The notes under the pieces: model-generated
Seen by the model: the letters and a program-made list of their open reading frames with translations, nothing else
Told to the model about the DNA's origin: nothing
Databases searched by the model: none
Part shown: positions 2,037-44,100 of the stretch, piece after piece
Numbering within the stretch: position 1 is the stretch's first letter
Layout: each line of letters starts with the position of its first letter
DNA from: Geosiphon pyriformis uo1
Taxonomy: Eukaryota; Fungi; Glomeromycota
DNA: 64,000 nucleotides
Direction of reading: 5' to 3'
Assembly: GCA_016748015.1 (NCBI GenBank)
Contig: JAAOMT010000690.1
Span: 124,001 to 188,000, forward strand
Position numbers and translations under genes: made by a program

Positions 2037-3250
2037 ACACCAAAGTCTTTTAAGTTATCTTATACTTTCTACAGAATACTATTAACTTATAATATTAAAA
2101 TTTTACAAATAAACTTAATAACTTTAACACATTCAAAACTGCATTTCTATAGTATTTTAACAATTATAATAGGATCAATTAGCTATTAATTGGCTTTACT
2201 ATAATTAAACAAAGTGATACAGAAACAGTTACTACTTACTTAGAATACTTTTATAGAAATCTGTACCAAATTCAAGCAATTGACATGATTTACTTTATAG
2301 TACCACAAATCTTAAACCAATTTATTTGCAGATTATACAATAATTTTCTATAACAAGTATGTCTATTACATTCAAAATACAGTTACTTATCAAAAATTTT
2401 GAATCAGCTAAGTTTAAAACCAATTATGCTTAAGCTATTAACCTAATAATAAATAGATCATCTGAATTGGATTCTAAACTAAAGCAATTTAGCAAATTTA
2501 TTAATCAGAAATTAGAAAGATACTTAGCTAATAATTTAATAATTTATCAATTCTTACAATATTACAACAATCAAAAAAATTCAAATCAAAATCAAAATTA
2601 GTTGTATCTATTATTATTATTAGTATTAGCAAATCAACAATGGCAACAAAAAATGCATAATTGTTATTATTGTAATAAATAAAGTTATTTAAAAACAGAT
2701 TGTTGTTCTAAGTTTAATAATTTATGATTAGGAAATCAAGCTAAAAACTTTGATCACAGGTTTTAAATCCTGAATTATGTTAATAATTTAGCAATAGAAC
2801 AATATTCATATTAATTACATTATGTATAAATAATGCAGCAGCCAATATATTTACTTCTAATCTACTAAACTCTAGTCTTAATAATTTATTTAAGCACTGT
2901 AGTCACAAGTAATTTATCAATTCCAACAAATTCAAGTATTCTAAAATTTAATTCAAATATTTATTAAAAACCAAAGACCAAAAATTACTCATATTTAACA
3001 AAATTGGAAATTGGCAATAGTAATATATTAACTGATCTTTAGTTTATTAAACCAGCCATTAAGATTATACCAGTAAAGTTTGAAAAATAAGTATACTCAA
3101 AACCCAAATTTCCAGAACTATTTAAGTCTCTTGATTATTTCAGAAAATATCTAATTCACCAATCTAAAAAACTCAAAACAACAACTCTTTAATAATATTT
3201 TACCAGTAACAATTATTAAAAACAAATTACTTATTGCCATATTTTTTTTT
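2037..3250 (+). pseudogene. Gypsy gag remnant, interrupted at its 5' side by the younger element ending at 2036
   Basis: Decayed translation ...KQSDTETVTTYLEYFYRNLYQIQAIDMIYFIVPQILNQFICRL (Retrotrans_gag-like 'Q..ET..Y...F'), followed by a zinc-knuckle-like remnant near 2660-2705. Confidence 0.55.
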
Positions 3251-3976
3251 AAATAGAAAAACAAAATTAAAATCTTATTATTTAGTAAAACTGCTCTTGA
3301 TACTAAATCAATTATTATTATGTACATTAATATCAGAGTTGATAATATTATGAGAGAGTTTTTTTGGTATATTTTAATTGTTAATATCCCATTTTAATTG
3401 CAATCAGTCTCTTATGAATTCCTTGATTTTATGTGTTAAATATTAATAATAATGTACTGAAGATTTTCTCTTGATGTTGAGATGTAAGTCTTTTTTTTAA
3501 TTTTAGTTGTCTTTGTATGTTGTGTATTTCTTCTTAGAGACTAATCTAAAATCTACTCACTGTCTGAAGTCTTCTTTGAGGTTATTCTTGTAATTGCTTG
3601 ATGTGTTTTTCTAATCTAAAAACATGGAATATTAATGGTCTTTTCACAATTTCTCTAAGTATATAATAAAGTTTTTTCAATTTAATTAGTAATCATATGA
3701 ATAATTTTAATTAGAAATTATTCTTCCAAAGAGTTCAAAAATGGAATGATAGTTTCATTCACTAAAGAGAATATGTAAATTTTATTGTTAATCTTATAAT
3801 TGTAATGTTAATTCAATTTATTATTTTTATTAATTCTTTTTAAATAAAATTTTATTTAAATATTTGTTGTTTTGAGTTAAAACTGTTAGATTCTTTATTA
3901 TTAAAAACTATTATATATATATATAATTATTTTTTTACAAAATAACATCTTGTAATACTTTATTTCTATTATTTCT

Positions 3977-4045
3977 AAATAGTGTTTGCTGCTATTGTGA
4001 AATAGTGTTTGCTGCTATTATAAAATAGTGCTTGCTGCTATTATA
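3977..4045. repeat. 3 x 23-bp tandem repeat (AAATAGTGTTTGCTGCTATTRTR)
   Basis: Three adjacent near-identical units read directly, inside a decayed segment that separates the gag and protease remnants. Confidence 0.8.
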
Positions 4046-4164
4046 TAGTAGTACTTGTTATTATTTATAAATTATTTTTTTTTCTTTTTATAAATTGTTG
4101 TTGTGCTATTTTATGATTGGTTAATTTATATTATTTATAATTCTTATTAAATTTTTGAACTATA

Positions 4165-4520
4165 ACAATGGCTAATCTATCAAGTTAATCTTTAATAGTG
4201 AATTAGTAAACAATATTATTATATAACAATTAATAAATTAATTAAGTTGTCAAGTTGATTGAGCTATTAGCATTAAAATTATTATTATTAATGAAATAAT
4301 AAAAACTTCTATTAACAAAATTAATAATGTTTTTTTTAAAGTTAATGATATTATTATGTCAATTAAAGTTTTAGTTATAGAAGCCATATAATACCAAACT
4401 CTAATAAATAATAATTGGCTGTCTAAGACCAATACTGTACTCAATTAAAACACCTAAAAACTTTAGTTAATATATATAGGATAGTATAATCAGATTTTAG
4501 GTATTTGTAATCACTTTAAA
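4165..4520 (+). pseudogene. Retrotransposon aspartic protease remnant
   Basis: IKLIFNSELVNNII reverts by A->G/T->C to IKLILDSGSAGSII (DSG active site). Downstream SIKVLVIEAI*YQTLINNNWLSK resembles the '(L/V)G.DWL' protease end. Confidence 0.6.
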
Positions 4521-13271: not shown

Positions 13272-13559
13272 AAATGATTGCATCAAAGTCAACAATGAAA
13301 GAATAAAAAGATCAATAAGACGCAGTATTTGCTGATTTTTTCCAAGTTTTTTGTTTTATTTACCCTCAGCCTGAAACCGCCCACTATCATATTGGCCATG
13401 TGGAAAATTTTTGAAATATGTACGCAAGTCCTATTTATTTGAAATTGATCTGTTTGTTCTTTAAAATAAGAAGCCTTCAGCGATAAATGATTGTTCTGCC
13501 AAATTCGTTTCGGAAAAATTATATGATGCAATTGATTACACAAGTTTATCATTATAATT

Positions 13560-13700
13560 GAGATATGAGCGATTATCCCGGATGGATTAACATATCAATA
13601 ATAGGCAATATTAAGAATTGCTATGTAACGCTTATTATTTCCTGCGTGGTCACTGTAGACTAAGGCTCCATAAAGCAATGTCCGGAGGAAGATTTTATGT
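13560..13700 (-). ncRNA. Candidate omega-RNA (right-end RNA) scaffold plus flank-derived guide of the Fanzor element
   Basis: It lies directly 3' of the nuclease gene and contains a stem-loop ATAG(G)CAAT/ATTGCTAT at 13601-13624 with outer AATAAT/ATTATT arms. Position is by analogy to TnpB/Fanzor; there is no expression evidence. Confidence 0.35.
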
Positions 13701-15051
13701 CTATCCATAATAAGTTTACAATTCCGGATATTTCCACGCCAGCTACAAGTTTTAAAGGTATTGGATGATAACTCGTGCTCACAATTCTTCTGCCTTGGTG
13801 ATCAGACGTTGACGTAATCGATAGTGTATCTTTCTAACTTTGTCGTGTGATTTCTCTCGTTTTTTGATTCACCATCAAAGGGAGGAATGAAAATAGCATC
13901 AAATTCATGAGTGAAAAATTTGACAGCCTTTCTATCTGCAAGTGTAAGATCTTGTGATGCATGCACCCAATCCCGTTTTCTAATATTTTGGCTTTAGCTT
14001 TCTTACGTTTTGAGGAGGTATTTCATTTATCTTTCTTTGAGCAAAGGTCATCAAAGAATTAACAATACGACTGATGTCACAAGAGCCTATTTTGCCTACA
14101 CTCTTTGTTGGGGTCTATGGAGACTGCATAAACAGAGCCATCTGCTTGAGTTTTGTGGAGCTGTTCTTACGTTTCGTATACCTAGGCAAACTTCCACTCA
14201 TTAATTTTGCGATAGTAAATGAGCTTGTCATTATATATAATCTTGTGTGGATTAGGCATTTTTACATTTTTTTTTCGAAGTGTAGAGGCCATAGTACATT
14301 TTATCCTGAAAAATAAAGTATAAAAATGGCATAAATGCGACATAAATAAAGATATAAACAATTTATTATCTTTACCACATGTCGATGTGCACATGCTGGA
14401 GTGTGAAGGTAAGATAGATAGAAGCGATTCCAAGGTAACTTGGTAAAATTCTGAAGTGCCTTACGAGATTGACAAGATTTTTTATTGATGCATCTTCTTC
14501 TCACTGCATTACGTTTAATAACTTCCTTTCGCGCAACCAATGCCTTGATCAATCGCTTCGTCTGTGATGTTGGCAGGAGCTCAACCTACGCAAGAGCATG
14601 CCAAGATGGAGAATCCCTCTGCAAAATTTTCTTTCACCCCAGATACCCGAAACATCATCAAAAGAAGACGTTTTGTTGAAACGTCATATCCTTTTTCCGT
14701 GATATCATCTTGTTTCATAAATGATGGACGCCTTTTGCTCCATCCTATCACAGTACTAAAGGCAAATCTCGCCAAGCCCATTCATCGCTTCAATAGCCGC
14801 TTCTGAGGATGATTGAGATACATTCTGACTAGTAACGTGCAGTTCCGTCTTCTGGCGTTTTGCCACGAGCCGCTGTTGCCTTTCCCTTGTGCAGAGAACT
14901 ACGAGTTTTGTAGAATGGAGGGAGAAGATGTATTGGGAGAGCTCAAAGGAAAACAGCAGTCAATCAGAGTAGGTAATTGCAACCTCCGAGACAGCACCGT
15001 GGCTTGATCGTTCCAGTAAGGTCTTAAGTCCCTGGCGCTTGAAGTTGACCC
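13655..15051 (-). pseudogene. tnpB: TnpB/Fanzor2 RNA-guided nuclease pseudogene
   Basis: In order: STSSARDLRPYWN..LQLPT, HTH RMYLNHPQKRLLKR*MGLARFAF (14826-), APANITDEAI, QSRKA, RuvC-I VSIDP (14124-14110), KIG..DISRI, IFIPPF (13894-13877), HYRLRQRLITKAEEL (13826-13782), KTCSW.G (13753-13733), RNCKLIMDR and IFLR (to ~13682). There are many small deletions. Confidence 0.85.
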
Positions 15052-15200
15052 AGAGCCAGTATTGCTGACAAGCTCATATGTCGGGAATCGGGCGAGAAAT
15101 TATTTTTGTCGCTCAAGATCTCTTTTTGCTTTGCATTAGAAAGATGGGCATAGAGTTAACCTTTCTTGGTATCAACATTTTGTGAAGTTAGCTCAGGAAA
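14840..15200 (-). pseudogene. tnpA: IS607 transposase (serine recombinase, TnpA) remnant
   Basis: LYAHLSNAKQK (15155-15123; consensus YARVS..KQK), DLERQ (15120-15106), FLARFPTYELVSNTGSG/VNFKRQGLKTLLER, EVAITYSD*L.FSFEL (DRL.RF.FEL) and KLVVL. The N-terminal MerR-like HTH and helix E are largely deleted. Confidence 0.85.
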
Positions 15201-15319
15201 GAGGAAGCATTTATTTTCGCGATTTTGAATCTGATAATCATTACTATGTAGTATTTTTTATTGATAGGCATTATTAAGCAAATCTTTTCATCAGTTCAAC
15301 AAAGATACTTTACGTTAGA

Positions 15320-16610
15320 ATGAACATCCTATGGCTCCTTGTCATATTGTTTACACTTTTTCAAAGAATCGCTGGATACACTGCATTTTCAGATGAGAAA
15401 ATCCGCGCAACGAGTAATATAACAGCTCCAGCCAATTCTATAGAGAAGTTTCTTGATTCATTTCTAGTTCCCCGAGTACCTGGCACTGAATCCCACGCAA
15501 AAGTACAACGTTTTATCATCACCCACTTTGAAAAGCTTGGGTGGCACGTAGAACAAGACAATTTCACAGACACGACACCGCTTGGAAAAAAACCCTTCAG
15601 TAACATTATAGTGACAAAAGACATCACTGCTTCTAAACGTCTGGTACTGGCCGCGCACTATGATTCGAAATATTTTGAACCTCCTAACCATAATTTTGTG
15701 GGAGCAACTGATTCGGCTTTCTCTTGTGCTCTACTCTTAGACTTGGCTTTTAATTTAGACAAATTGTTAAATCGTAGATCAAACTTAGAGACTACTCTGC
15801 AAATCATATTTTTCGATGGTGAGGAGGCTTTTCAGGAATGGACTGCTACAGATTCACTTTATGGGTCAAGGTAAGTTCTATCGAAATTGGGGTGTTGGAA
15901 AGCCGAGGCTTCTAATTCTTCGAATCAAAAATGGTTACGACCCAATGAACATTGATATATATTTGCCATTAGAAATTGTACTAATCTGACTTGTGAATTC
16001 GAATCCGATTCTTCGCGATTAAATCCGTCATGTCATATGTTGGTCTGTTGAATCTTAGGCATCTCGCGACAAAATGGGAACAAACCTATGTCACGAGGAC
16101 CGATTATTTTCAACATCATGCAACATCATTATTAGATGGCATAGAGGTTTTCGTATTGCTAGACTTGCTAGGTGCGAAGGATCCCCAGATAAAAAATTTT
16201 TTTCAAACAACCTCATGGCTCTATAAAAATCTGGCTCGCATTGAGAACCGTCTTTGGGAGCAATCTTTATTACGCGGAGACGAAAACGACTTGGAAAAAG
16301 AATTATATTTTGACCCAAAAATGCTTTACGCTTTTTATCAATATGGGGTTGAAGACGATCACCTTCCATTCTTGCAAAAGGGTGTTCCTATTGTTCACAT
16401 CATACCATACCCCTTTCCGTCAGTGTGGCACAAGTTGGAAGTAAGATTTGTTTTTTCAAGATATAGTCTTTGTTCAAATTACTTGCTTTCTCATCGCTGT
16501 TCTCATACTTCCAAAAGGATAATAAAGACGCTTTGGATCCTGAGGTTATGCATAATTTGAATCTTATTTTTCGTGTTTTTGCTGCTGAATATTTACACCT
16601 CGATCCATAG
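15320..16610 (+). CDS. Glutaminyl-peptide cyclotransferase (peptidase M28 family), signal peptide; exons 15320-15870, 16059-16440, 16518-16610
   Basis: Motifs RVPGT, LAAHYDSK, GATDSA, IFFDGEEAF..WT.TDSLYGSRHLA, LLDLLG, EDDHLPF and PFPSVWH. Hydrophobic N-terminus and in-frame GT-AG introns. Confidence 0.92.
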
Positions 16611-35230: not shown

Positions 35231-36299
35231 ATAATTTTAAATCCAATTTAATAAAAAACTACTATATAAAGTTGTATAAATCTTTATGAATTCTGAAACT
35301 TTGTGTTTATAAAAGTATGTTTCTATTGTTAGTTTCGATTTTTATTTGAAGTATTTGATCAATAAAGTATTATCAAATTCTTTATGCTAATAATGCTGAA
35401 TACCAATTAGATTATAAGAATTTTTTGTGGATTATTTCAGAATTGATCTACGAAATTTAAAATCTCCCTAACTGTATTATATAGCAGTTAGACTTTACTT
35501 ATTAAATGTTTAATAAAAAAAATTTATATAAATCAAATTATTAATTAAGCAGTAATACTTAAGAATTTATTAAATAATTAATAATAAATTAAAATAATAA
35601 AATATATTAATTAATAATAAAAATTATAAAAATAATTTTATGTTAATTAATAACTCAAATTTCTACTAATAACATATTTTTTTCTTAAGATTAAGTTCTA
35701 TTAAATCCAAATATTGTTTGGAATTTTTAGATAATAATTCAAAATTATTAAAATAATTTGATTTAAAAATCATTAAAATTTTAATTTTGTGAGTTTTTTA
35801 ATATATTAAATTTTTAATAGTTGTAATATCAGATTTTGTAAATATTTTTATAAAAAAAATTTAAAATATAATAAAAAAATAATAATTTATTTTTGGTTTG
35901 AAGAATTTTGTGTTTATTTTTGATTATTTTAAAGTTTTTTATAAAAAAGTATAAGAATATAAATTAAAAATATTAAATATTTAAATTTAAAGCTTGTTTA
36001 ATAACAACTATTGGTTTTAAGTTTTGAAAAATATTTTATTTTATTTTTTAGTTTTAATTCTGTATAAAAAAACTTTATTTCCAATTTTAAATTTATTTGT
36101 AATAGGTAATAATTTGTTGTTACGTTATTTTTTTTGTTAAACTTAAAAATATTCAATGTAAATAACTGCTTTTTTTTCAAAGTACTAAGAAAAATATAGA
36201 TCATATTTTTTGAAAAAATTTTTTGTAATCAATTAAATTGGATTAATAATATTGTTGTATTTTTATATATTAAATTAAATAATATATGTTTTATTGTAT

Positions 36300-36800
36300 T
36301 TTGTTTTAATATTTTATATATTAATAATACTAATAGAATAAAGATGGTTTATTTTTATTCAAAATTAATTGAAACTTTCGCTAATAATTTATAAAATGGT
36401 TTATTAAAATGTTTTGTAAATTTATTTATTTAAGAATAATAAAATAAAAATAGAAATTTTTTAATATTAAATTGTTTAATATTTGTATTAAATTGTTTAT
36501 AAAATGTGTTTTTTAATCAAATAATAGTTTCATTAAATATTTATATCTACAAATAATATTTTTGTAGATGAAATTTGTTATTAATTTTGTATTTGTTCTT
36601 TAAATAATTTTTGTTTTAGATTATTTTATAAAAATAATATACAGTAATTACAATATATTGGTTTTTTTAAATTGTAATAAATAGTATTATTAACAGATTT
36701 TTACAGTTTTTAATGCAAAAATTACAATATATATTATAGAAATTATCATTAAAATTATGTAAAAAAAATTTATATTATTATATGTAATTAACAAAATTAG
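36300..36800 (-). pseudogene. Extremely decayed Gypsy integrase core
   Basis: The minus strand reads NFIYKNIICRYKYLMKLLFD*KTHFINN, matching the rve 'F....IICR.G.P..LLSD.G.HF.N' pattern after reverting transitions. Confidence 0.5.
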
Positions 36801-37340
36801 TCGGAAAATAAAAAATAAAAGATTAATAATTAATTTAATAATAATAAAAATATATAGTACAATCTAATTAGTTAATTAAATTAAATATAAAAAAATCTTA
36901 GCAAATTAAGAAACACCAATAAAAATTAAGGATTAATATATATAATTTAATAACAACAAACTTTATTATGTTTCAAAATTTTTACACACTTTTATTTATG
37001 CAATTTAATATTCCAAATTTGTAATTATTATTTGAAAATAGTTACTAAAAAATATAATTAATTAAATTATAATTAATATTAATAATATATAATTACATTT
37101 TTAAATTTAACTATTAAAATCTGATTATTTAAATTATTAGTTCTTAAAAAATAATATACCAAGTAAGCTTACAACTAAATTAAATAATTTAATGTATATA
37201 AATAATTAATATACTTAAAGTAATTTTAATATAGTATATAGATCTTATGTAATTTAGCTATATATAGTTTTTTTATAAGTTAAAAAAACATAATTTTATA
37301 TTAAGTTAATTCTTTTTTATAGTTTTATAATAAACAGTTA

Positions 37341-37375
<35 letters not shown>

Positions 37376-38512
37376 TTTAAGTTCTAAATATTTTTTATTA
37401 ATCTTTAAAGTATATATATAATTATTATTAATCTTTTAAATTTTTTATTACTTTTAAATTTTTAAATATATGTTATTAACATTTTATATTATGTCTTATT
37501 TTACCAAATAAATTATTAGTTTTATTATCTAATCTTGTTTTATTATAATATTAATTAAGTAATAAAAAGTGTTATATTATTAAAGATATAGTTTTAATAA
37601 TAGTATTTAATTAATTAAATATTTTAGTTATGTTTTTTTATATATTTTTTATTTTTTATTTTAAAACTAAGCTTTTAAATACCACATATTTTTAATAATT
37701 AATTGAAAAAATTCTGATTATGCTTTAATTGAATAGTTTTAATTTTTTGTTAATTATATTTTTTGTGTTTTTATAAAATTTGATTATTTTTTCTTATAAA
37801 ATTCATATTAAGTTGGTTTTTGTCTAAAAATAAATAATAATAACAATATTTTTTTTATTTTTATAATTTGTTTATTACTTTTTTATTTTTTTATTTATTA
37901 AAATAATTTATATAATTATGTATATATTAGAATTAATAATAATATATATAGTTATATATATTATTTAAAAAAATATTGTTATTGTTAAAAAAGTTTTTAA
38001 ATTTATGTTTTTTTAGTAACAATAGTAATTCAATTAAATTAATACTAATTTTATTAAAGTTGTTTAACTTTAATTGAATTTAAAAATTTAAAAAGTGAAT
38101 TTTTTTTAATAATTATTACAAAATTCAACATATTATTATATATTTTTTTATATTTAAAACCAAAAATAATGTTTTAATGTTTTTTAAATAATAATAATTT
38201 TTTTAAAGTATACTAATAAAGTTGTTTTTTTTATGTTTTTAAATTAATTTAAGTAAGTTGTTTAGATTTATTTAGTTTTAATAATAGATAATATTCATGT
38301 ATAAGAAGTATTATTTTAATTAATATTGCAAATAATATTTTTTATTTGAAAACAAATTTTCTGATATTGTAAATATCTTTAAATAAATTTTGAAATTATT
38401 GTAATTTTTAAAATTTATTTGTTGTTAATTTAATTGGTTTTTAATTTTATTTTATTTTTAACAAACTGTTTATATTTATGTATAGTTTTTCTGATTTATA
38501 ATATATAATATA

Positions 38513-39276
38513 TGTTATTATTTATATAAAAAACAGAAAATAATAATAGTATAAATAATTAATAGCATAGTAAAAAATTATTAAAATATATAATATTAAA
38601 AATTTTAGCAATAATTTAAAAAAATTGTAAAAATTTTAAAAACTTCATATTACAAAAATTTATGTATATATAATAAAAGTATTAAAAACCATAAAAACAA
38701 ATATTTAAAAAACAAACAAGTTTATTTAAAAACCAGTTTAATTTTCTATTATTACTTTTATTAATTTTAATTATTTTAATAAAAACATATTAATTAATTA
38801 TTTTTAAACCAATTAATTTATAAATTTTATTAAAAATTCAATTTTATTTAAATTAATATCAGTAGTATTAATAATATTAACTTAATAATTCTAGAACAAT
38901 AGTTTTTAATTATAATTATTAATAAAATATTAATTTCTATTTTATTTTTATTTTTTTTCTTTGTTTGTTTTTTTTGTTTTATTAATTAATAAAAAAAATA
39001 CTAAAATTACAATATTAAAAATTGTCTAATAAAAAATGTTAAAAAATAAATTTAAGTGTAATTATAAGAATTAAAATTACTTATTAAAAAGATATAAATA
39101 TTAAAATAAACTAGTTATTATATTAAAAAAATTATATATTAATAATTAACTATAATTACTGTAAATTTTTATTTATTATACAAAAATTGCAACCAAAATT
39201 TTTAGATTTCAGTATTAATTTACTTATATATTATGTTTTAGAATTATTAACTTATCTAAAAAATTTATCTGTAATA
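38513..39276 (+). repeat. LTR copy 3 (heavily decayed)
   Basis: 38891-38936 aligns without gaps to 1583-1628 of copy 1. Termini are TGTTAT and GTAATA. Confidence 0.65.
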
Positions 39277-40343
39277 ATATATAATTAACTAAGAAATTAG
39301 TCTATTAGGATTGTTTTATATTAAGCTTTAAATTTTTTTTGTTGAATTATTTAAGTTTAATATTATTAAATTCTTTGTTTTCTTTAAAATATTAATAAAA
39401 ATATTTAAAAGCTTATATAATTATTACTGCTTTTAATTTAATAGATAAATATTTGGTTTTAGCAAATTTAAGTATTTTATTAGCATAAATTACTACTTTT
39501 TAATTTTTATTATCAATTTTGTTTTAAATATTTCAAAAGTTTTTTGTTGTATTAAAGTTTATTACTATTTTATATTTTTGTTGATTAAATAATTAAAAAA
39601 TTTGGCAATTTTTAATAAATTTTTAATAATAAAGTATTAATTCTACAAATTTTTTTAATTTAATTATTTAAAAATTCTAAAATTTTATACAATATTTATT
39701 TTTTTGATCAGGTTTAATCTTATTTTTGTTAATAATATAATCAAAAAAACTAAAATTGTTTTTTTAAAATAGAATTTTTAATGTTTTAATTTTAATTCTG
39801 TTTTATATAATTATTAAAAAACTTCTTATAAATAAACTAAATAAGCTTTAAAATTAATAAGTATATATTAATATTATTAAGATAAACAATTATTAATTAT
39901 CTTAAAAGATTAATATATATAATATTTATAAATTATAAAAATATTATTAATATATTACATAATTTAAAAAATATTATATTAAATTTGTAATTTTTTTTGA
40001 ATTATAAAAACTGTTTTTGGATGATTTTTAAAATTTAGAATTACTTATTAATATCTACTTTTTAAGTTTTATGTTGAAAAGTATTTTAATTTTTTAAAAA
40101 CATTTAACATATTGTCAATTCATAAAAATAAGTATATATTTTTAATTATTACATTATAAATTAATAATAATCTATAGAAAATCTAATCTTTTTATTTTTT
40201 TCTTAATTAAAACTACTAATAAAATTTATAGGCTTTTTAATAATTGAATAAATCTATTTTTAGATATTTTTTAAACTTTTTTTTTAATGAATTAATAACT
40301 AATAAGTAGTATTTAATATATTTATTAACATTTTAATTTGATA

Positions 40344-41162
40344 TTATTACAAATAATTCTATAAAATTATTGAATTTTTTGTAATTTGGTGTTTAAATTA
40401 GTTAATTTTTTAATTTAAAATTTTTTAAAAATTTAGTAATAAATTTCATTATATAATAGACAAAAATTTAATATTAATAGTGAGTAATATTTAATATCTG
40501 ATTTTTTTGCATAATAAATAGTTTATTTTAGTGTTTTTTATTTTTTTAGTAAATAATTCTAGTTTTTTTGACTATATTTTATGTTTTTTTTGGTATTTTT
40601 ACCAAACAATTTTTGATATTATTATTTTAATGCTTTTTTTAATTAATTAGTAAACACAAAACAAAACAAAACAAAAATAAATAAATAAAATAGAAAATTA
40701 ATATTTTCTTATTAGTTATAATTAAAAATTATTATTCTAATATTGTTAATGACTTTATATTGATATTATTAACATTAATAAAGAAGTAATTAAATTTTAA
40801 TAAAATAAATACAAACTTATAAAACTGTGTTTAGATAATATAATTTAATAAATTTATTTAAAATAATTATAGATTTTAAGTATTCAATTATTAACTATAG
40901 AAATTATTTAATAAAATAAAAATTAAACTTGTTTTTAATTTAATTTGTTTTTTCAGTTTTTAATATTTTTGCTATATATATATTAATCTTTATAATATAA
41001 AACTTCTAAAATTTTTAAAATTTTTGGCATTTTTAAAATCTTTAATATTCTTATTAATATTTTTAAAATTTTTAATATTATATGTTTTAATAATTTATAT
41101 TTTGTTATTAAATATTTATAATATATATATATATTTTTTGTTTTATTTTACAAATAATAATA
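40344..41162 (-). repeat. LTR copy 4 (heavily decayed, inverted relative to copy 3)
   Basis: The reverse complement of 40690-40740 matches the conserved LTR block. It is preceded on the minus strand by GAGCTTAATATTAAAAAA, as in copies 1 and 2. Confidence 0.6.
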
Positions 41163-44100
41163 TATATTTTTTTAATATTAAGCTCTAATAAAATTTTCTA
41201 AATTTTTTTTTGAATAAATTTTAGTATTTTTTTATTATTATAATATTAAAATTTTTGTTTTTAGTTTTTAAACTAAAAATTGATTATTTTTTTTAGTTGT
41301 TTTTATAATTGAATATAATAATATTTTGTTGTATTATATATAGTCAATATATTGTTTTTAAATAGATTATTAAGTTGTTTTTTTAATAAAATGTTTTATT
41401 TGTTGTATTATTTTTTTATCAAATACTTTCTTAAATCTGTTGGTATACAATTTTCAAATATTTAGTTATTAGTTCAAATAATAATAATAATATATTATTA
41501 AAAATTGTTTTTTTTTCAATTTTTCTAGTTATTTTTTATTAGTTTTTTAGATTAAACAATTATTAATGTATTTTTAAAAATTTTTTTTTATTTTTCAATA
41601 ATTTTTTTTAGTAATTGTCTATTTATATTTATAGTTTATTATATAAAACTATTTGAATTATTTTTTTTATATGTTTTTATAATAAATTATTTAACTGCTA
41701 ACTGTTATTTTTATGTTTAAATTTTTATTTTTTAAAACTTAAAATAGTTATTAAACATTTAAGTAAATATTATTCATAATTTTTATTTTTTTGGTTGTTT
41801 TATTAAATATATTTTTTTTTATTAATAATATTATTGTTTTATTATATATTAATTTAAATAATATTATTTGAATTATATCTTGTTTTCTTGTTTAATAAGT
41901 AAATAATACTAATAATATAAACAAATTCTATTTTTTTTGGTTTTTTTGGTTAATTTTAACTAATATTTTACACAAAATTTTATTAAATTATTTAACTAAA
42001 TTATTTGTTTGAAAATAATATAATAATAATAATAGTTTTTTTACTTTAAATTTTTTATTTAATTTAGTTAATGTTTTATTTTTAAAGTGAATTTTTTAAT
42101 TAAATAGCAATTTTTTTAAATATTTATGTTAATATATTAAGTTTTAATATACAAATTTTGTTACTAACTTAGTATTAGCTTTTTAAATAATTCTAACTTC
42201 TAGTTATTTAATAAAATAATTTATAATAATAGTAATATATTTGTTGTTTTTAGTTATTATAAATAATAATTTAATTAAATCAATTTTAAATCAATTAAAT
42301 AATTGTTTAATTTTAATTAATCTTAATAATTTACTTAGTCTTATTTTTTTTTGGTAAGTATTTTAATTTTGTATATATTATTTTGTATTTAGATATATTA
42401 TTAACTAATAATACAGTTTTTTGGTTTTTTTAAGTATTAATTTTTTATTAAAATATTTTGTTATTAAATCTAAATACATATTAAACAAGATTATTTTTTT
42501 TATTTTACTATTATTTTTAATAGATTACTTAATTTTTATTATATAATAAGTTTTAGTAAATAATATAATATCTAATTTGCTGATGTATTCTATTTTGTTT
42601 ATTTTAAGATAATTTTTTCTTAAATTATTTAATTTTAATATAATGTAATAATTATTAATAATTTTTATTGTTTATTTTAATATTTTGTTAATGTTTTTGG
42701 TTTTATAGTTATCTTATTTATAATAAACTATTATTGATTTTTTTTTGTAATGTATTTTGTATTTAAATAATAAGAATATAGTTTTTTATTTGATATTTTT
42801 ATTGTTAATCAACTTATTTTTTTGTAGTAATATTAATTTTTTATAATTAATATAAACATCAAATTTTTGATGAAAATTTTATTATTATTTAATATATTGT
42901 TAAGTATTTTAGTATTAAAGTTATATAATTTTATTTAGTTAAATTTAAGCTTTAATTAATATATACTATTAGATGTTTTTATTTATCTGATTTTTATTAT
43001 AATAATATTGTTTTTAATACTGTTTTAAATATATTAATAGTAATTATAAATTGCTTATTGTGGTTTAAATATATTAAAACTAGTATTTGAATTAACTTTT
43101 GTCTTGATTTTTTAAAAGTTTATTATTATATATTTATATATATATTATGTATTTTTAGTTTAAAGTTAATAAAATAATTGAAATATTGTTAAAAAATTCT
43201 AAATAAATTATTAATAATATTTTGTTAATTCCAAAATTTTTTTCAATTCTATTAAGTTTTTAGGTCTTAAAAATTTCTTAATCTTCTTAATTTTATTTGA
43301 ATTTATGTTAAATTTTAGTTTAACTTATTATAATTATTTAAATACTTATTATAAATAATATATATGTTTATTAAAAATTTTTAAAAACATATTAATATTA
43401 TTTAGATAAACTATTATTGATTTTATAATATATTTAAATATATAATTTTTATTAGCTATTAAAATATGACCAATATATCAATTAAACTAAATAATATTAT
43501 ATTAAATTCAAAGTTTTTTTATATGATAAATAATATTTTCTTTTTATTATTTAGATTTATAACTATTTGTTAATAATTATTGTCTAAATTTAATATAAAA
43601 AACTATTTTTTTTTATTAAATAATTATCATTGTAAGTAATACTGTTAAGCTTATAATAGTTTATACAAAATTGAGTTTTTTTATTTTTTTTCTGAATTAA
43701 TATTCCTAATAATAACTATAAACTTATAAATAAATAAATAATTTATTATCTAATATTTAATTAATTTTTTTCTAAATAATTTTATAATTGGTTAGTAGTA
43801 TTTAATATGTGTTTTGTTTAATTAACATAGTATTTTTAGTTTTTATTTTGTGTTAAATAAGATTTGTTTTTTTAAATTTATTTTTATTTACAAACATATT
43901 AGCATATTAATTAAGCAATATTTGGAATTATATTTTTTGTAATTGGTCTAGGTTTTTCAAGTTTATTTTTTCTAATTGTTCTGATTGAAATAAATAATAT
44001 TTTTTTTGGCCCAAATTTCTAATGTAAAATCTATATATTTACATAATTGGATAAAGTTTAAAACATTTATTAATAACTAATCTTTAATTTTTAAACTTAA

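What the first reader, a model, noticed from the sequence alone, without database searches (positions are those of the whole stretch)
13577..15280. Hidden IS607-TnpA + Fanzor2/TnpB RNA-guided nuclease transposon in a fungal gene island
Seen: the ORF track shows only short fragments here, but reading the minus strand across frameshifts gives an ordered set of motifs. First comes a serine recombinase (LYAHLS..KQK-DLERQ, SG.NFKRQGL, D*L.F.FEL). Then comes a full TnpB-type nuclease: HTH, RuvC-I SIDP, bridge region, IPPF, HYRLRQRL, KTCS, C..MDR, IFLR. Established: tnpA(serine)+tnpB is the IS607 architecture, and eukaryotic Fanzor2 nucleases derive from IS607 TnpB. Inference: this fungal lineage hosts, or hosted, a two-gene RNA-guided transposon system, and intact copies could supply a new programmable nuclease. 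This copy is inactive: the catalytic YARVS reads YAHLS, and deletions fall at the RuvC-II and RuvC-III positions.
Basis: partly seen in the sequence, partly recalled or inferred. Interest (0 to 1): 0.93.

Follow-up and report, generated by a model that had tools for sequence, protein, structure and literature searches.

The report
Dead IS607/Fanzor2 transposon copy in Geosiphon
This stretch is a long-dead copy of a known kind of jumping gene (IS607 type, carrying a serine recombinase and a Fanzor2/TnpB RNA-guided nuclease) that once multiplied in the fungus Geosiphon pyriformis; following it up also showed that in this whole element clade the recombinase gene lies inside the nuclease gene in another reading frame.

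Summary
Window 13577-15296 (minus strand) is one decayed copy of a dispersed repeat in Geosiphon pyriformis. At least 39 other copies were scored, at 66-85% identity. The ends are sharply conserved, with no inverted repeats.

The copy carries collinear relics of an IS607-type serine recombinase (TnpA) and a Fanzor2-type TnpB. It has 27 deletions relative to the family majority. These remove the RuvC-II glutamate, half the zinc ribbon and the RuvC-III aspartate. No stop-free Fanzor frame of 180 codons or more outside the N-terminal region was found in about 50 sampled loci.

RNA-derived contigs show the element sits between a host poly(A) site (13337) and a host mRNA start (15304). No host transcript explains it. 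This is a new member of a known kind (IS607EU/Fanzor2). First-stage notes of this scan flagged similar relics elsewhere in this genome.

The nuclease ORF runs through tnpA in the +1 frame. That overlap encodes the structured N-terminal domain known from mimivirus Fanzor2. In 187 of 211 intact bacterial, viral and metagenomic relatives this frame has no stop across the last 140 tnpA codons (4.6 expected). I found no paper describing this.

The parts
13577..15296 (-). Whole decayed IS607EU/Fanzor2 element (about 1.72 kb). Fuller siblings measure about 1.8-1.95 kb.
   Evidence: Own-genome DNA search gave 108 matching pieces at about 39 other loci, 66-85% identity. Homology edges fall at 15286-15296 and 13571-13579.
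15257..15296 (-). Left end: (GATGAAA)AGATTTGCTTAATAATGCCTATCAATAAA. Its subterminal motif GCTTAATAATGCCTATCAATAA recurs as a direct repeat at the right end. This is the presumed TnpA binding site (inferred).
   Evidence: Eight aligned 5' junctions: the flanks differ, and the element sequence is conserved from AAGATTTGC onward.
14756..15178 (-). Serine recombinase (IS607 TnpA) catalytic-domain relic, with no MerR HTH. It starts MLIPRKV..YAHLS. There are frameshifts near 15119 and 15052, in-frame stops, and a 125-bp deletion at 14892/14893 that removes the C-terminal helix region.
   Evidence: NF033518 hits 14870-15049 at E 4.8e-4. tblastn gives E 1.7e-14 and 1e-16. Deletions are listed. Siblings L001/L002 read FYARVSSAKQKEDLERQ.
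14902..15099 (-). Fanzor2 N-terminal-domain relic, encoded in the +1 frame of tnpA. It carries the motif STSSARDLRPYWNDQATVLSRRLQLPTLID (14959-15048) followed by NS*FS (W codon mutated to a stop).
   Evidence: tblastn of P0017/P0008/P0169 runs in one frame from 15048-15081 into the TnpB core. The motif occurs in 20 of 151 homologues. The AF2 model aligns to the ApmFz2 NTD.
13595..14829 (-). Fanzor2/TnpB core relic.
- HTH_OrfB-like start: VRMYLNHPQKRLLKR*MGLARF (14740-14829).
- RuvC-I: SIDPN (D codon at 14113-14115), followed by a 32-bp deletion.
- IPPF: 13877-13888.
- HYRLRQRLITKAEEL: 13782-13826.
- RuvC-II Glu: lost (10-bp deletion at 13762).
- Zinc ribbon: half lost (33-bp deletion at 13728).
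- RuvC-III Asp: lost (14-bp deletion at 13694).
- Stop codon: 13595-13597.
   Evidence: Sibling ORF L009 keeps IQNEVYTSKTCGCCG...CKLVMDRDENGAQG, scores Pfam PF07282 at 9e-14 and matches PDB 9b0l at 3.9e-11.
13577..13621 (-). Right end: GCAATTCTTAATATTGCCTATTATTGATATGTTAATCCATCCGG. The terminal ...AATCCATCCG(G) is shared with the intact relative L298.
   Evidence: Eleven aligned 3' junctions. The L298 right end is at 4258-4264.
13579..13780 (-). Region where a guide (omega) RNA scaffold would lie, by analogy with TnpB and ApmFz2. It overlaps the 3' end of the ORF. This is inferred only.
   Evidence: Only about 17 nt separate the stop codon from the right end. RNAalifold on 10 copies gave -4.4 kcal/mol, which is not convincing. 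There is no Rfam match.

Best explanation
Window 13577-15296 (minus strand) is a fossil copy of an IS607-type DNA transposon (IS607EU) that once amplified in the nuclear genome of Geosiphon pyriformis.

The active ancestor carried two genes:
- tnpA, an IS607-family serine recombinase. By analogy with studied IS607 elements it excises and inserts the element without inverted repeats or target duplications. In this subfamily only the catalytic domain is present, so mobilisation was probably in trans (inferred).
- A Fanzor2-type TnpB nuclease. By analogy with ApmFz2 and IS607 TnpB, a guide RNA transcribed from the right end would direct it to cut the emptied donor site, so that the element is copied back (inferred, not shown here).

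The two genes are nested. The nuclease ORF starts shortly after the tnpA start and reads through tnpA in the +1 frame. The overlap encodes the Fanzor2 N-terminal domain.

This copy is dead. It has two shared frameshifts, stops that are mostly TGG/CAA/CGA changed to stop codons, and 27 deletions that remove three of the nuclease's catalytic or zinc-binding elements and the C-terminal part of TnpA.
For: Host and setting:
- The organism is Geosiphon pyriformis (a sibling ORF is KAG9307454.1).
- It is a multi-copy family with sharp conserved ends.
- The site is intergenic: the upstream host mRNA is polyadenylated at 13337 and the downstream spliced mRNA starts at 15304.

TnpA:
- Relic at the locus.
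- Siblings score NF033518 at 5.5e-21 and PF00239 at 3e-8.
- TnpA of intact relatives scores 196.7 bits on the IS607 transposase equivalog and matches PDB ISC1904 TnpA at 2.4e-34.

Fanzor2:
- Collinear tblastn hits.
- Siblings keep DPG, NE.YTSKTC, CxxC..C..C and DRDENGA.
- 68 PF07282 hits genome-wide.
- The best PDB sequence match is mimivirus Fanzor2 9b0l, at 3.5e-17.
- The AF2 model of the closest intact relative matches 9b0l at Z 23.7. It is the only listed chain aligned from residue 84 (chain residue 53); all other chains align from about residue 190.

Nesting:
- Both frames are open in L034, L035, L037, L054 and L298.
- 187 of 211 loci have no +1 stop in the last 140 tnpA codons, against 4.6 expected from synonymous shuffles.
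- The same frame in the tnpB core has 6-8 stops per 140 codons.
- The first ATG sits at a conserved -98 nt from the YxRVS codon.
- tnpA third-position identity is 0.44 in the overlap, against 0.34-0.35 elsewhere.

Decay.
Against: - No activity, guide RNA or TAM was shown.
- The consensus RNA structure of the 3' ends is weak and there is no Rfam hit.
- Single stop-free pieces of this copy match no Pfam family on their own.
- The PF00239 and PF07282 genome scans did not list this locus.
- The HTH-less TnpA makes autonomous transposition of this subfamily doubtful.
- Translation of the overlap is inferred from stop avoidance, the conserved ATG, motif retention and the ApmFz2 structure. It is not shown by proteomics. 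Higher third-position conservation is partly confounded by higher TnpA amino-acid conservation.
Confidence: 0.85

Rival explanations
1. One reading: a classical two-gene IS607 with tnpA followed by a separate tnpB. On this view the open +1 frame and its PYW..LWLP..SWFS motif are only a shadow of tnpA conservation and are not translated.
For: The conserved N-terminal residues lie on the same DNA as conserved TnpA residues (GL..LLE, IVV, DRL). Per-locus synonymous shuffles for three loci alone were only modestly significant, at P 0.05-0.10. NCBIfam TnpB models cover only the roughly 389-position core.
Against: - 187 of 211 loci are stop-free, against 4.6 expected, with an internal control.
- The ATG position is conserved.
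- The motif persists where no tnpA overlaps it: Naegleria lovaniensis L055, and L056 where tnpA ends upstream. In P0073 and P0074 it sits at the very N terminus.
- The ApmFz2 NTD (residues 53-130) is resolved by cryo-EM and contacts the RuvC domain, the omega RNA and DNA (PMC11832414). The P0017 model aligns to it.
Confidence: 0.08
2. The region belongs to a host gene or a spliced host transcript, and the transposon-like motifs are incidental.
For: Contigs of run X1, which are evidently RNA-derived, lie on parts of the element (13616-14207 and 14398-15008).
Against: - Those contigs are colinear with the genome and unspliced.
- The neighbouring host mRNAs end at 13337 (poly(A) tail) and begin at 15304, with GT..AG introns only downstream.
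- The stretch is a dispersed repeat riddled with stops in every frame.
Confidence: 0.02
3. The family was acquired recently from the Nostoc endosymbiont of Geosiphon, or is bacterial contamination of the assembly.
For: The closest named TnpA relatives are largely cyanobacterial, including Nostocales. Published work places pro-Fanzors in Cyanobacteriota.
Against: - The copy is flanked by intron-containing, polyadenylated host genes.
- There are dozens of old copies only 66-85% identical to this one.
- In a tree of the C-terminal 230 aa the Geosiphon rows group (SH-aLRT 99) with unnamed metagenomic Fanzors (P0017, P0024, P0169, P0003, P0153). They fall outside the group holding the Nostoc, Scytonema and Dolichospermum rows. 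This was a quick tree with long Geosiphon branches, so the evidence is weak.
Confidence: 0.05

Closest known systems
ApmFz2 (mimivirus L79) within IS607-type ISvMimi elements (PMC10530073, PMC11832414; PDB 9b0l)
   Same: Both pair an IS607 TnpA with a Fanzor2. Both have the DPG motif, a RuvC-II Glu six residues before the zinc finger, and DRD.N. The structured N-terminal domain also corresponds (model 84-642 aligns to chain 53-517, Z 23.7). In the related Moumouvirus-sized contig L262 the Fanzor ORF also spans all of tnpA.
   Different: The host is a fungal nuclear genome rather than a giant virus. This copy is dead. The closest intact relative (P0017) has a longer REC region (647 aa against 520 aa). 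The subfamily's TnpA lacks the HTH.
'Pro-Fanzor' IS607 elements of Cyanobacteriota and other bacteria (Yoon et al., bioRxiv 10.1101/2023.08.09.552727)
   Same: TnpA is 50-60% identical to that of the intact relatives. The nested +1-frame tnpB ORF of about 525 aa is the same, as is the PYW..LWLP..SWFS motif.
   Different: These elements are prokaryotic and intact. The paper defines the clade by DPG plus the shifted Glu, and does not mention an N-terminal domain or nesting.
Classical IS607 (H. pylori), IS1535, ISC1904
   Same: Serine-recombinase TnpA (PDB 3ilx, 6dgc, 6dgb). No TIRs or TSDs, subterminal direct repeats, and ends in or next to GG (PMC13565253, PMC4058570).
   Different: The literature describes tnpA and tnpB there as separated or only partially overlapping (PMC9956272). 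TnpB is about 390-430 aa without the Fanzor2 NTD.
Fanzor2 of Naegleria lovaniensis (P0018, GCA_003324165.2)
   Same: Same Fanzor2 clade and N-terminal motif (IIPFWDEYSQQVSDKLW).
   Different: No tnpA in the -1 frame or upstream. The ORF is intact and lies among host genes.
Fanzor1 (e.g. SpuFz1, PDB 8GKH)
   Same: A eukaryotic TnpB homologue with DPG and the shifted Glu.
   Different: No Fanzor1 chain (e.g. 8GKH) is among the listed PDB sequence or fold matches for P0017. Per the literature, Fanzor1 associates with other transposon superfamilies and not with an IS607 TnpA.

Membership tests
IS607 family / IS607EU transposon | Encodes an IS607-type serine recombinase (TnpA catalytic domain, YxRVSS..Q..DL.RQ, GSG.N..R.GL, DRL.RFG.E) | tested here: met
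   A relic only. NF033518 scores E 4.8e-4 at window 14870-15049 and 5.5e-21 in siblings, all below the curated cut-off because the copies are broken. tblastn gives 1e-14 to 1e-16. Intact relatives score 196.7 bits against a 110-bit cut-off.
IS607 family / IS607EU transposon | TnpA has an N-terminal MerR-like HTH DNA-binding domain | tested here: not met
   Matches in this subfamily start at model position 51 or later. The sibling TnpA starts MLIPLLPRKVTFYARVSS, roughly 110 nt from the left end. The intact relatives L035 and L298 have the HTH.
IS607 family / IS607EU transposon | No terminal inverted repeats and no target-site duplication. Subterminal direct repeats. Terminus at a GG. | tested here: met
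   The left and right ends share a direct motif (GCTTA.TA.TGCCTAT.A.T.A), not an inverted one. Flanks show no duplication. The right end is ..CCATCCGG in 3 of 11 copies and CCG+N in most of the others, which is compatible with G-to-A decay. This was read by eye from the alignments.
IS607 family / IS607EU transposon | tnpB lies downstream on the same strand | tested here: met
   Collinear hits.
Fanzor2 / pro-Fanzor TnpB | DPG motif in RuvC-I | tested here: met
   Sibling L005 reads AVSIDPGIHT. The window reads AVSIDPN, followed by a 32-bp deletion.
Fanzor2 / pro-Fanzor TnpB | RuvC-II glutamate shifted to six residues before the zinc finger | tested here: met
   Met for the family: L009 reads IQNEVYTSKTCGCCG. 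In the window copy the Glu is deleted (10 bp at 13762).
Fanzor2 / pro-Fanzor TnpB | C4 zinc ribbon (PF07282) and RuvC-III DRD.N motif | tested here: met
   Met for the family: PF07282 at 9e-14 and 1e-11 in siblings, and 68 genomic hits. The window copy lacks the second CxxC and the DENGA residues (33-bp and 14-bp deletions) and was not listed.
Fanzor2 / pro-Fanzor TnpB | Closer to IS607 TnpB and ApmFz2 than to Fanzor1 | tested here: met
   PDB sequence ranking: 9b0l at 3.5e-17, then TnpB at 5e-9, with no Fanzor1 chain listed. Fold match Z 23.7.
Fanzor2 / pro-Fanzor TnpB | Structured N-terminal domain (RuvC-R plus thumb) as in ApmFz2 | tested here: met
   The P0017 model has a helix at 90-98 (pLDDT block 93) and a strand at 130-133. 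Alignment to 9b0l starts at 84 (chain 53). The window keeps the motif DLRPYWN..LSRRLQLP.
Fanzor2 / pro-Fanzor TnpB | Guide (omega) RNA encoded at the right end; RNA-guided cleavage | tested here: inconclusive
   No convincing conserved structure and no Rfam family. Activity cannot be tested here.

The most novel reading that the evidence does not exclude
In the IS607 clade that gave rise to Fanzor2 (bacterial 'pro-Fanzor', giant-virus and eukaryotic elements), tnpA is almost wholly nested inside the tnpB/Fanzor2 gene. The nuclease ORF (about 525 aa) starts at a conserved ATG about 98 nt upstream of the TnpA catalytic-serine codon. It reads the TnpA catalytic-domain DNA in the +1 frame to make the N-terminal domain (RuvC-R plus thumb) so far described as unique to ApmFz2.

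Three things would follow:
- That domain is ancient and bacterial in origin.
- Annotation and family models that cover only the roughly 389-residue core would miss it.
- Its sequence co-evolves codon by codon with the recombinase. Lineages that lost tnpA (for example Naegleria) kept the overprinted frame.
Probability: 0.6. Interest if true: 0.65.

Novelty: new member of a known kind. Interest (0 to 1): 0.5.

Why it matters
The locus itself adds a host lineage. It is a multi-copy but apparently extinct IS607EU/Fanzor2 family in a glomeromycotan fungus. IS607EU is described as the only eukaryotic DNA transposon known to use a serine recombinase (PMC13565253), and none of the papers searched mentions Fanzor in Glomeromycota. 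It does not supply a usable nuclease.

The wider point is the nested tnpA/tnpB arrangement. If confirmed, it would explain where the Fanzor2 N-terminal domain comes from. It would mean bacterial pro-Fanzor TnpBs should be expressed as proteins of about 525 aa rather than the roughly 370-aa core. It would also bear on the reported co-evolution of TnpA and TnpB in IS607, because part of the two proteins shares the same nucleotides.

Tried and rejected
- **Pfam on pieces.** Pfam on ten stop-free pieces of this copy found nothing. The pieces are too short and decayed, so profiles had to be run on siblings, on intact relatives or genome-wide.
- **Genome scans.** PF00239 and PF07282 scans of the genome did not list this locus. 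Only NF033518 did.
- **Intact copies.** The search for an intact copy in Geosiphon failed. There is no stop-free Fanzor frame of 180 aa or more outside the N-terminal region in about 50 loci. Only the best candidates are scored, so an intact copy is not excluded.
- **Guide RNA.** The RNAalifold consensus of ten 3' ends is weak (-4.4 kcal/mol). There are no Rfam matches in the window, in three Geosiphon siblings (L015, L016, L029) or in nine relatives from other sources. No guide-RNA claim is made.
- **Origin from the Nostoc symbiont.** The tree does not support it. It was a quick method with long branches, so this is only weak evidence against.
- **Naming the relatives.** Organism names for the closest relatives could not be recovered. 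Apart from Geosiphon's own proteins, only unnamed metagenome or Logan contigs were returned.
- **Consensus.** Majority states were used only to count indels and substitutions.
- **Another locus.** C667:97862-98338 is an IS607 TnpA relic with an HTH, but only 27% identical, so it belongs to another family and is not the autonomous partner.
Full report
**What is there.** The stretch is not unique. A DNA search of the window's own 128-Mb assembly returned 108 matching pieces at about 39 other loci, at 66-85% identity (40 of 167 candidates were scored, so this is a lower bound). Homology to the siblings stops abruptly at 15286-15296 and at 13571-13579. Aligned junctions show a conserved left end, (GATGAAA)AGATTTGCTTAATAATGCCTATCAATAAA, and a conserved right end...GCAATGCTTAGTATTGCCTATTATTGATGTGTTACAATCCATCCG(G), with unrelated flanks. 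The two ends share a direct motif, not an inverted one, and I saw no target duplication. The organism is Geosiphon pyriformis: a sibling ORF is identical to KAG9307454.1.

**Is it more than chance?** Single stop-free pieces of this copy hit nothing in Pfam, so I used relatives. Sibling ORFs hit PF07282 (9e-14 and 1e-11). The sibling C-terminal ORF has mimivirus Fanzor2 (9b0l) as its best solved relative, at 3.9e-11. A library-wide phmmer search with it gave intact proteins. The 647-aa P0017 aligns to the window collinearly from 15048 to 13649 (E 1e-21 and 2e-12).

Contigs encoding P0017, P0008, P0013 and P0012 each carry an intact serine recombinase. These score Pfam Resolvase at 2e-14 to 2e-17. 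The L035 TnpA scores 196.7 bits on the NCBIfam IS607-transposase equivalog and matches PDB ISC1904 TnpA at 2.4e-34. These TnpAs hit window 14849-15049 at E 1.7e-14. The TnpA of L298 is 58% identical there. The IS607 transposase profile itself finds window 14870-15049 in a whole-genome scan (E 4.8e-4) along with 29 other relics.

**State of this copy.** An alignment with 15 siblings shows 91% identity to well-supported majority states. It shows 27 deletions and 6 small insertions. Of 123 substitutions, 60 are G>A or C>T.

- A 125-bp deletion at 14892/14893 removes the C-terminal part of TnpA.
- Small indels near 15119 (two bases lost, one gained) and a 1-bp deletion near 15052 shift the frame.
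- A 32-bp deletion follows the RuvC-I SIDP.
- Deletions of 10 bp (13762), 33 bp (13728) and 14 bp (13694) remove the RuvC-II Glu, half the zinc ribbon and the RuvC-III Asp.

Siblings retain these as IQNEVYTSKTCGCCG...CKLVMDRDENGAQG. YARVSS reads YAHLSN.

None of about 50 sampled Geosiphon loci has a stop-free Fanzor frame of 180 aa or more outside the N-terminal region.

**Setting.** Contigs of the one public run that holds the stretch are evidently RNA-derived. The upstream Ofd1-type 2OG oxygenase transcript ends in a poly(A) tail at 13337. The downstream M28-peptidase transcript starts at 15304 and lacks two GT..AG introns. Inside the element only colinear, unspliced contigs are seen. No host mRNA explains the region, and the element is a nuclear intergenic insertion.

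**Classification.** The family meets the published Fanzor/pro-Fanzor signature, namely DPG in RuvC-I and a Glu six residues before the zinc finger. It is linked to an IS607 TnpA. An AlphaFold model of P0017 (mean pLDDT 70) matches ApmFz2 best (Foldseek 3.9e-21; Z 23.7). This is therefore IS607EU/Fanzor2, a kind known since 2013 (PMC3627910).

Two features depart from the textbook element. First, this subfamily's TnpA has no MerR-type HTH: profile matches start at position 51, and the sibling ORF starts MLIPLLPRKVTFYARVSS roughly 110 nt from the left end. The close intact relative L298 has the HTH. Mobilisation in trans is therefore likely, though this is inferred. Second, the genes are nested, as described next.

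**Nested genes.** P0017 aligned to the window in one frame right through the 'TnpA' region. There the window reads STSSARDLRPYWNDQATVLSRRLQLPTLID...NS*FS. In L034, L035, L037, L054 and L298 an intact tnpA lies entirely inside the 5' part of the nuclease ORF. The nuclease frame is the tnpA frame +1.

I fetched 240 TnpA relatives from metagenomes, prokaryotic genomes and viral contigs and measured the following.

- Of 211 loci with intact tnpA and downstream sequence, 187 have no +1-frame stop in the last 140 tnpA codons. Synonymous-codon shuffles predict 4.6.
- In 190 of 198 loci with a downstream ORF of 300 aa or more, that ORF overlaps tnpA by at least 300 nt (median 533-602 nt), nearly always in the +1 frame.
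- In the same loci, the +1 frame of the non-overlapping tnpB core has 6-8 stops per 140 codons.
- The first ATG of the long ORF sits at a conserved position, median -98 nt from the YxRVS codon. This gives proteins of about 525 aa.
- tnpA third positions are more conserved in the overlap (0.44) than upstream (0.35) or in the tnpB core (0.34). This is partly confounded by higher TnpA amino-acid conservation.

The overlap-encoded motif (STS..L.P[FY]W..S.KLWLP..DS...SWFS) is not a mere shadow of tnpA. It persists in Fanzor2 of Naegleria lovaniensis, where no tnpA overlaps it. It also persists in L056, where tnpA ends upstream.

The P0017 model aligns to ApmFz2 from residue 84 (chain residue 53), whereas every other TnpB or Cas12 chain aligns only from about residue 190. 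[quoted passage not shown] That domain completes the RuvC fold and clasps the DNA (PMC11832414).

NCBIfam's guided_TnpB model matches only residues 160-510 of P0008, and no listed model covers its first ~157 residues. Gene calls on the metagenome contigs kept only the long ORF and dropped tnpA.

Papers I could search mention only partial overlap or separation of IS607 ORFs (PMC9956272). None mentions this nesting. Absence from my searches does not prove it is unreported.

**Origin.** The closest named TnpAs are largely cyanobacterial. This is tempting given Geosiphon's Nostoc symbiont. However, in a quick tree the Geosiphon rows group (SH-aLRT 99) with unnamed metagenomic Fanzors (P0017, P0024, P0169, P0003, P0153), outside the group holding the Nostocales rows. 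The Geosiphon branches are long, so this is only weak evidence against a symbiont origin.

**Not shown.** I did not show a guide RNA, a TAM, any activity, translation of the overlap, or the host organisms of the intact relatives.

**Verdict.** The nested tnpA/Fanzor2 architecture is the part worth following up. First-stage notes of this scan flagged similar relics on other pieces of this genome, which fits the copy number found here.

Noticed in passing
window 13337 and 15304; introns at 15869-16056 and 16441-16517: RNA-derived contigs place the poly(A) site of the upstream Ofd1-like oxygenase gene at 13337. They place the 5' end of the downstream M28-peptidase mRNA at 15304, only about 8-18 nt from the element's left end. 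The insertion therefore abuts that gene's promoter region.
   Followed up: partly
L298:2078-4264 (metagenome contig ERZ27397459 k141_3543773): An apparently intact close relative of the Geosiphon family. TnpA with HTH lies at 2078-2815 and a 648-aa Fanzor at 2202-4148, so 614 nt are nested. Its right end, ...AAAATCCATCCG at 4264, matches the Geosiphon terminus. The host organism is unknown.
   Followed up: partly
window 15287-15296 and the 5' flanks of L016, L019, L023, L029: Several copies share GAT(G/A)AA(A) immediately 5' of AAGATTTGC. It is unclear whether this is the true first bases of the left end or a target/TAM preference. Published IS607 targets are G-rich, and G-to-A decay could have blurred one here.
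   Followed up: no
L299:2333-2854 (-) = G000:C667:97832-98353: A second, much more divergent IS607 TnpA relic in Geosiphon that still includes the HTH region (27% identity to TnpA of L298).
   Followed up: partly
L002 (C649:448676-450857) and L003 (C783:1107-4412): Two contigs carry the same copy with identical flanking ORFs. This is either a segmental duplication or assembly redundancy.
   Followed up: no
L056:1-330: In this metagenomic element tnpA ends 6 nt before the Fanzor ATG, so they do not overlap. Yet the Fanzor keeps the PYF..SLWLP motif, and the -1 frame under it looks like a decayed tnpA segment (..SLL**..PVATRRTQSALF). This suggests the overlap was resolved by duplication.
   Followed up: no
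window 36000-44000: Extremely AT-rich stretch (GC about 9-12%) between gene islands of about 35-40% GC.
   Followed up: no
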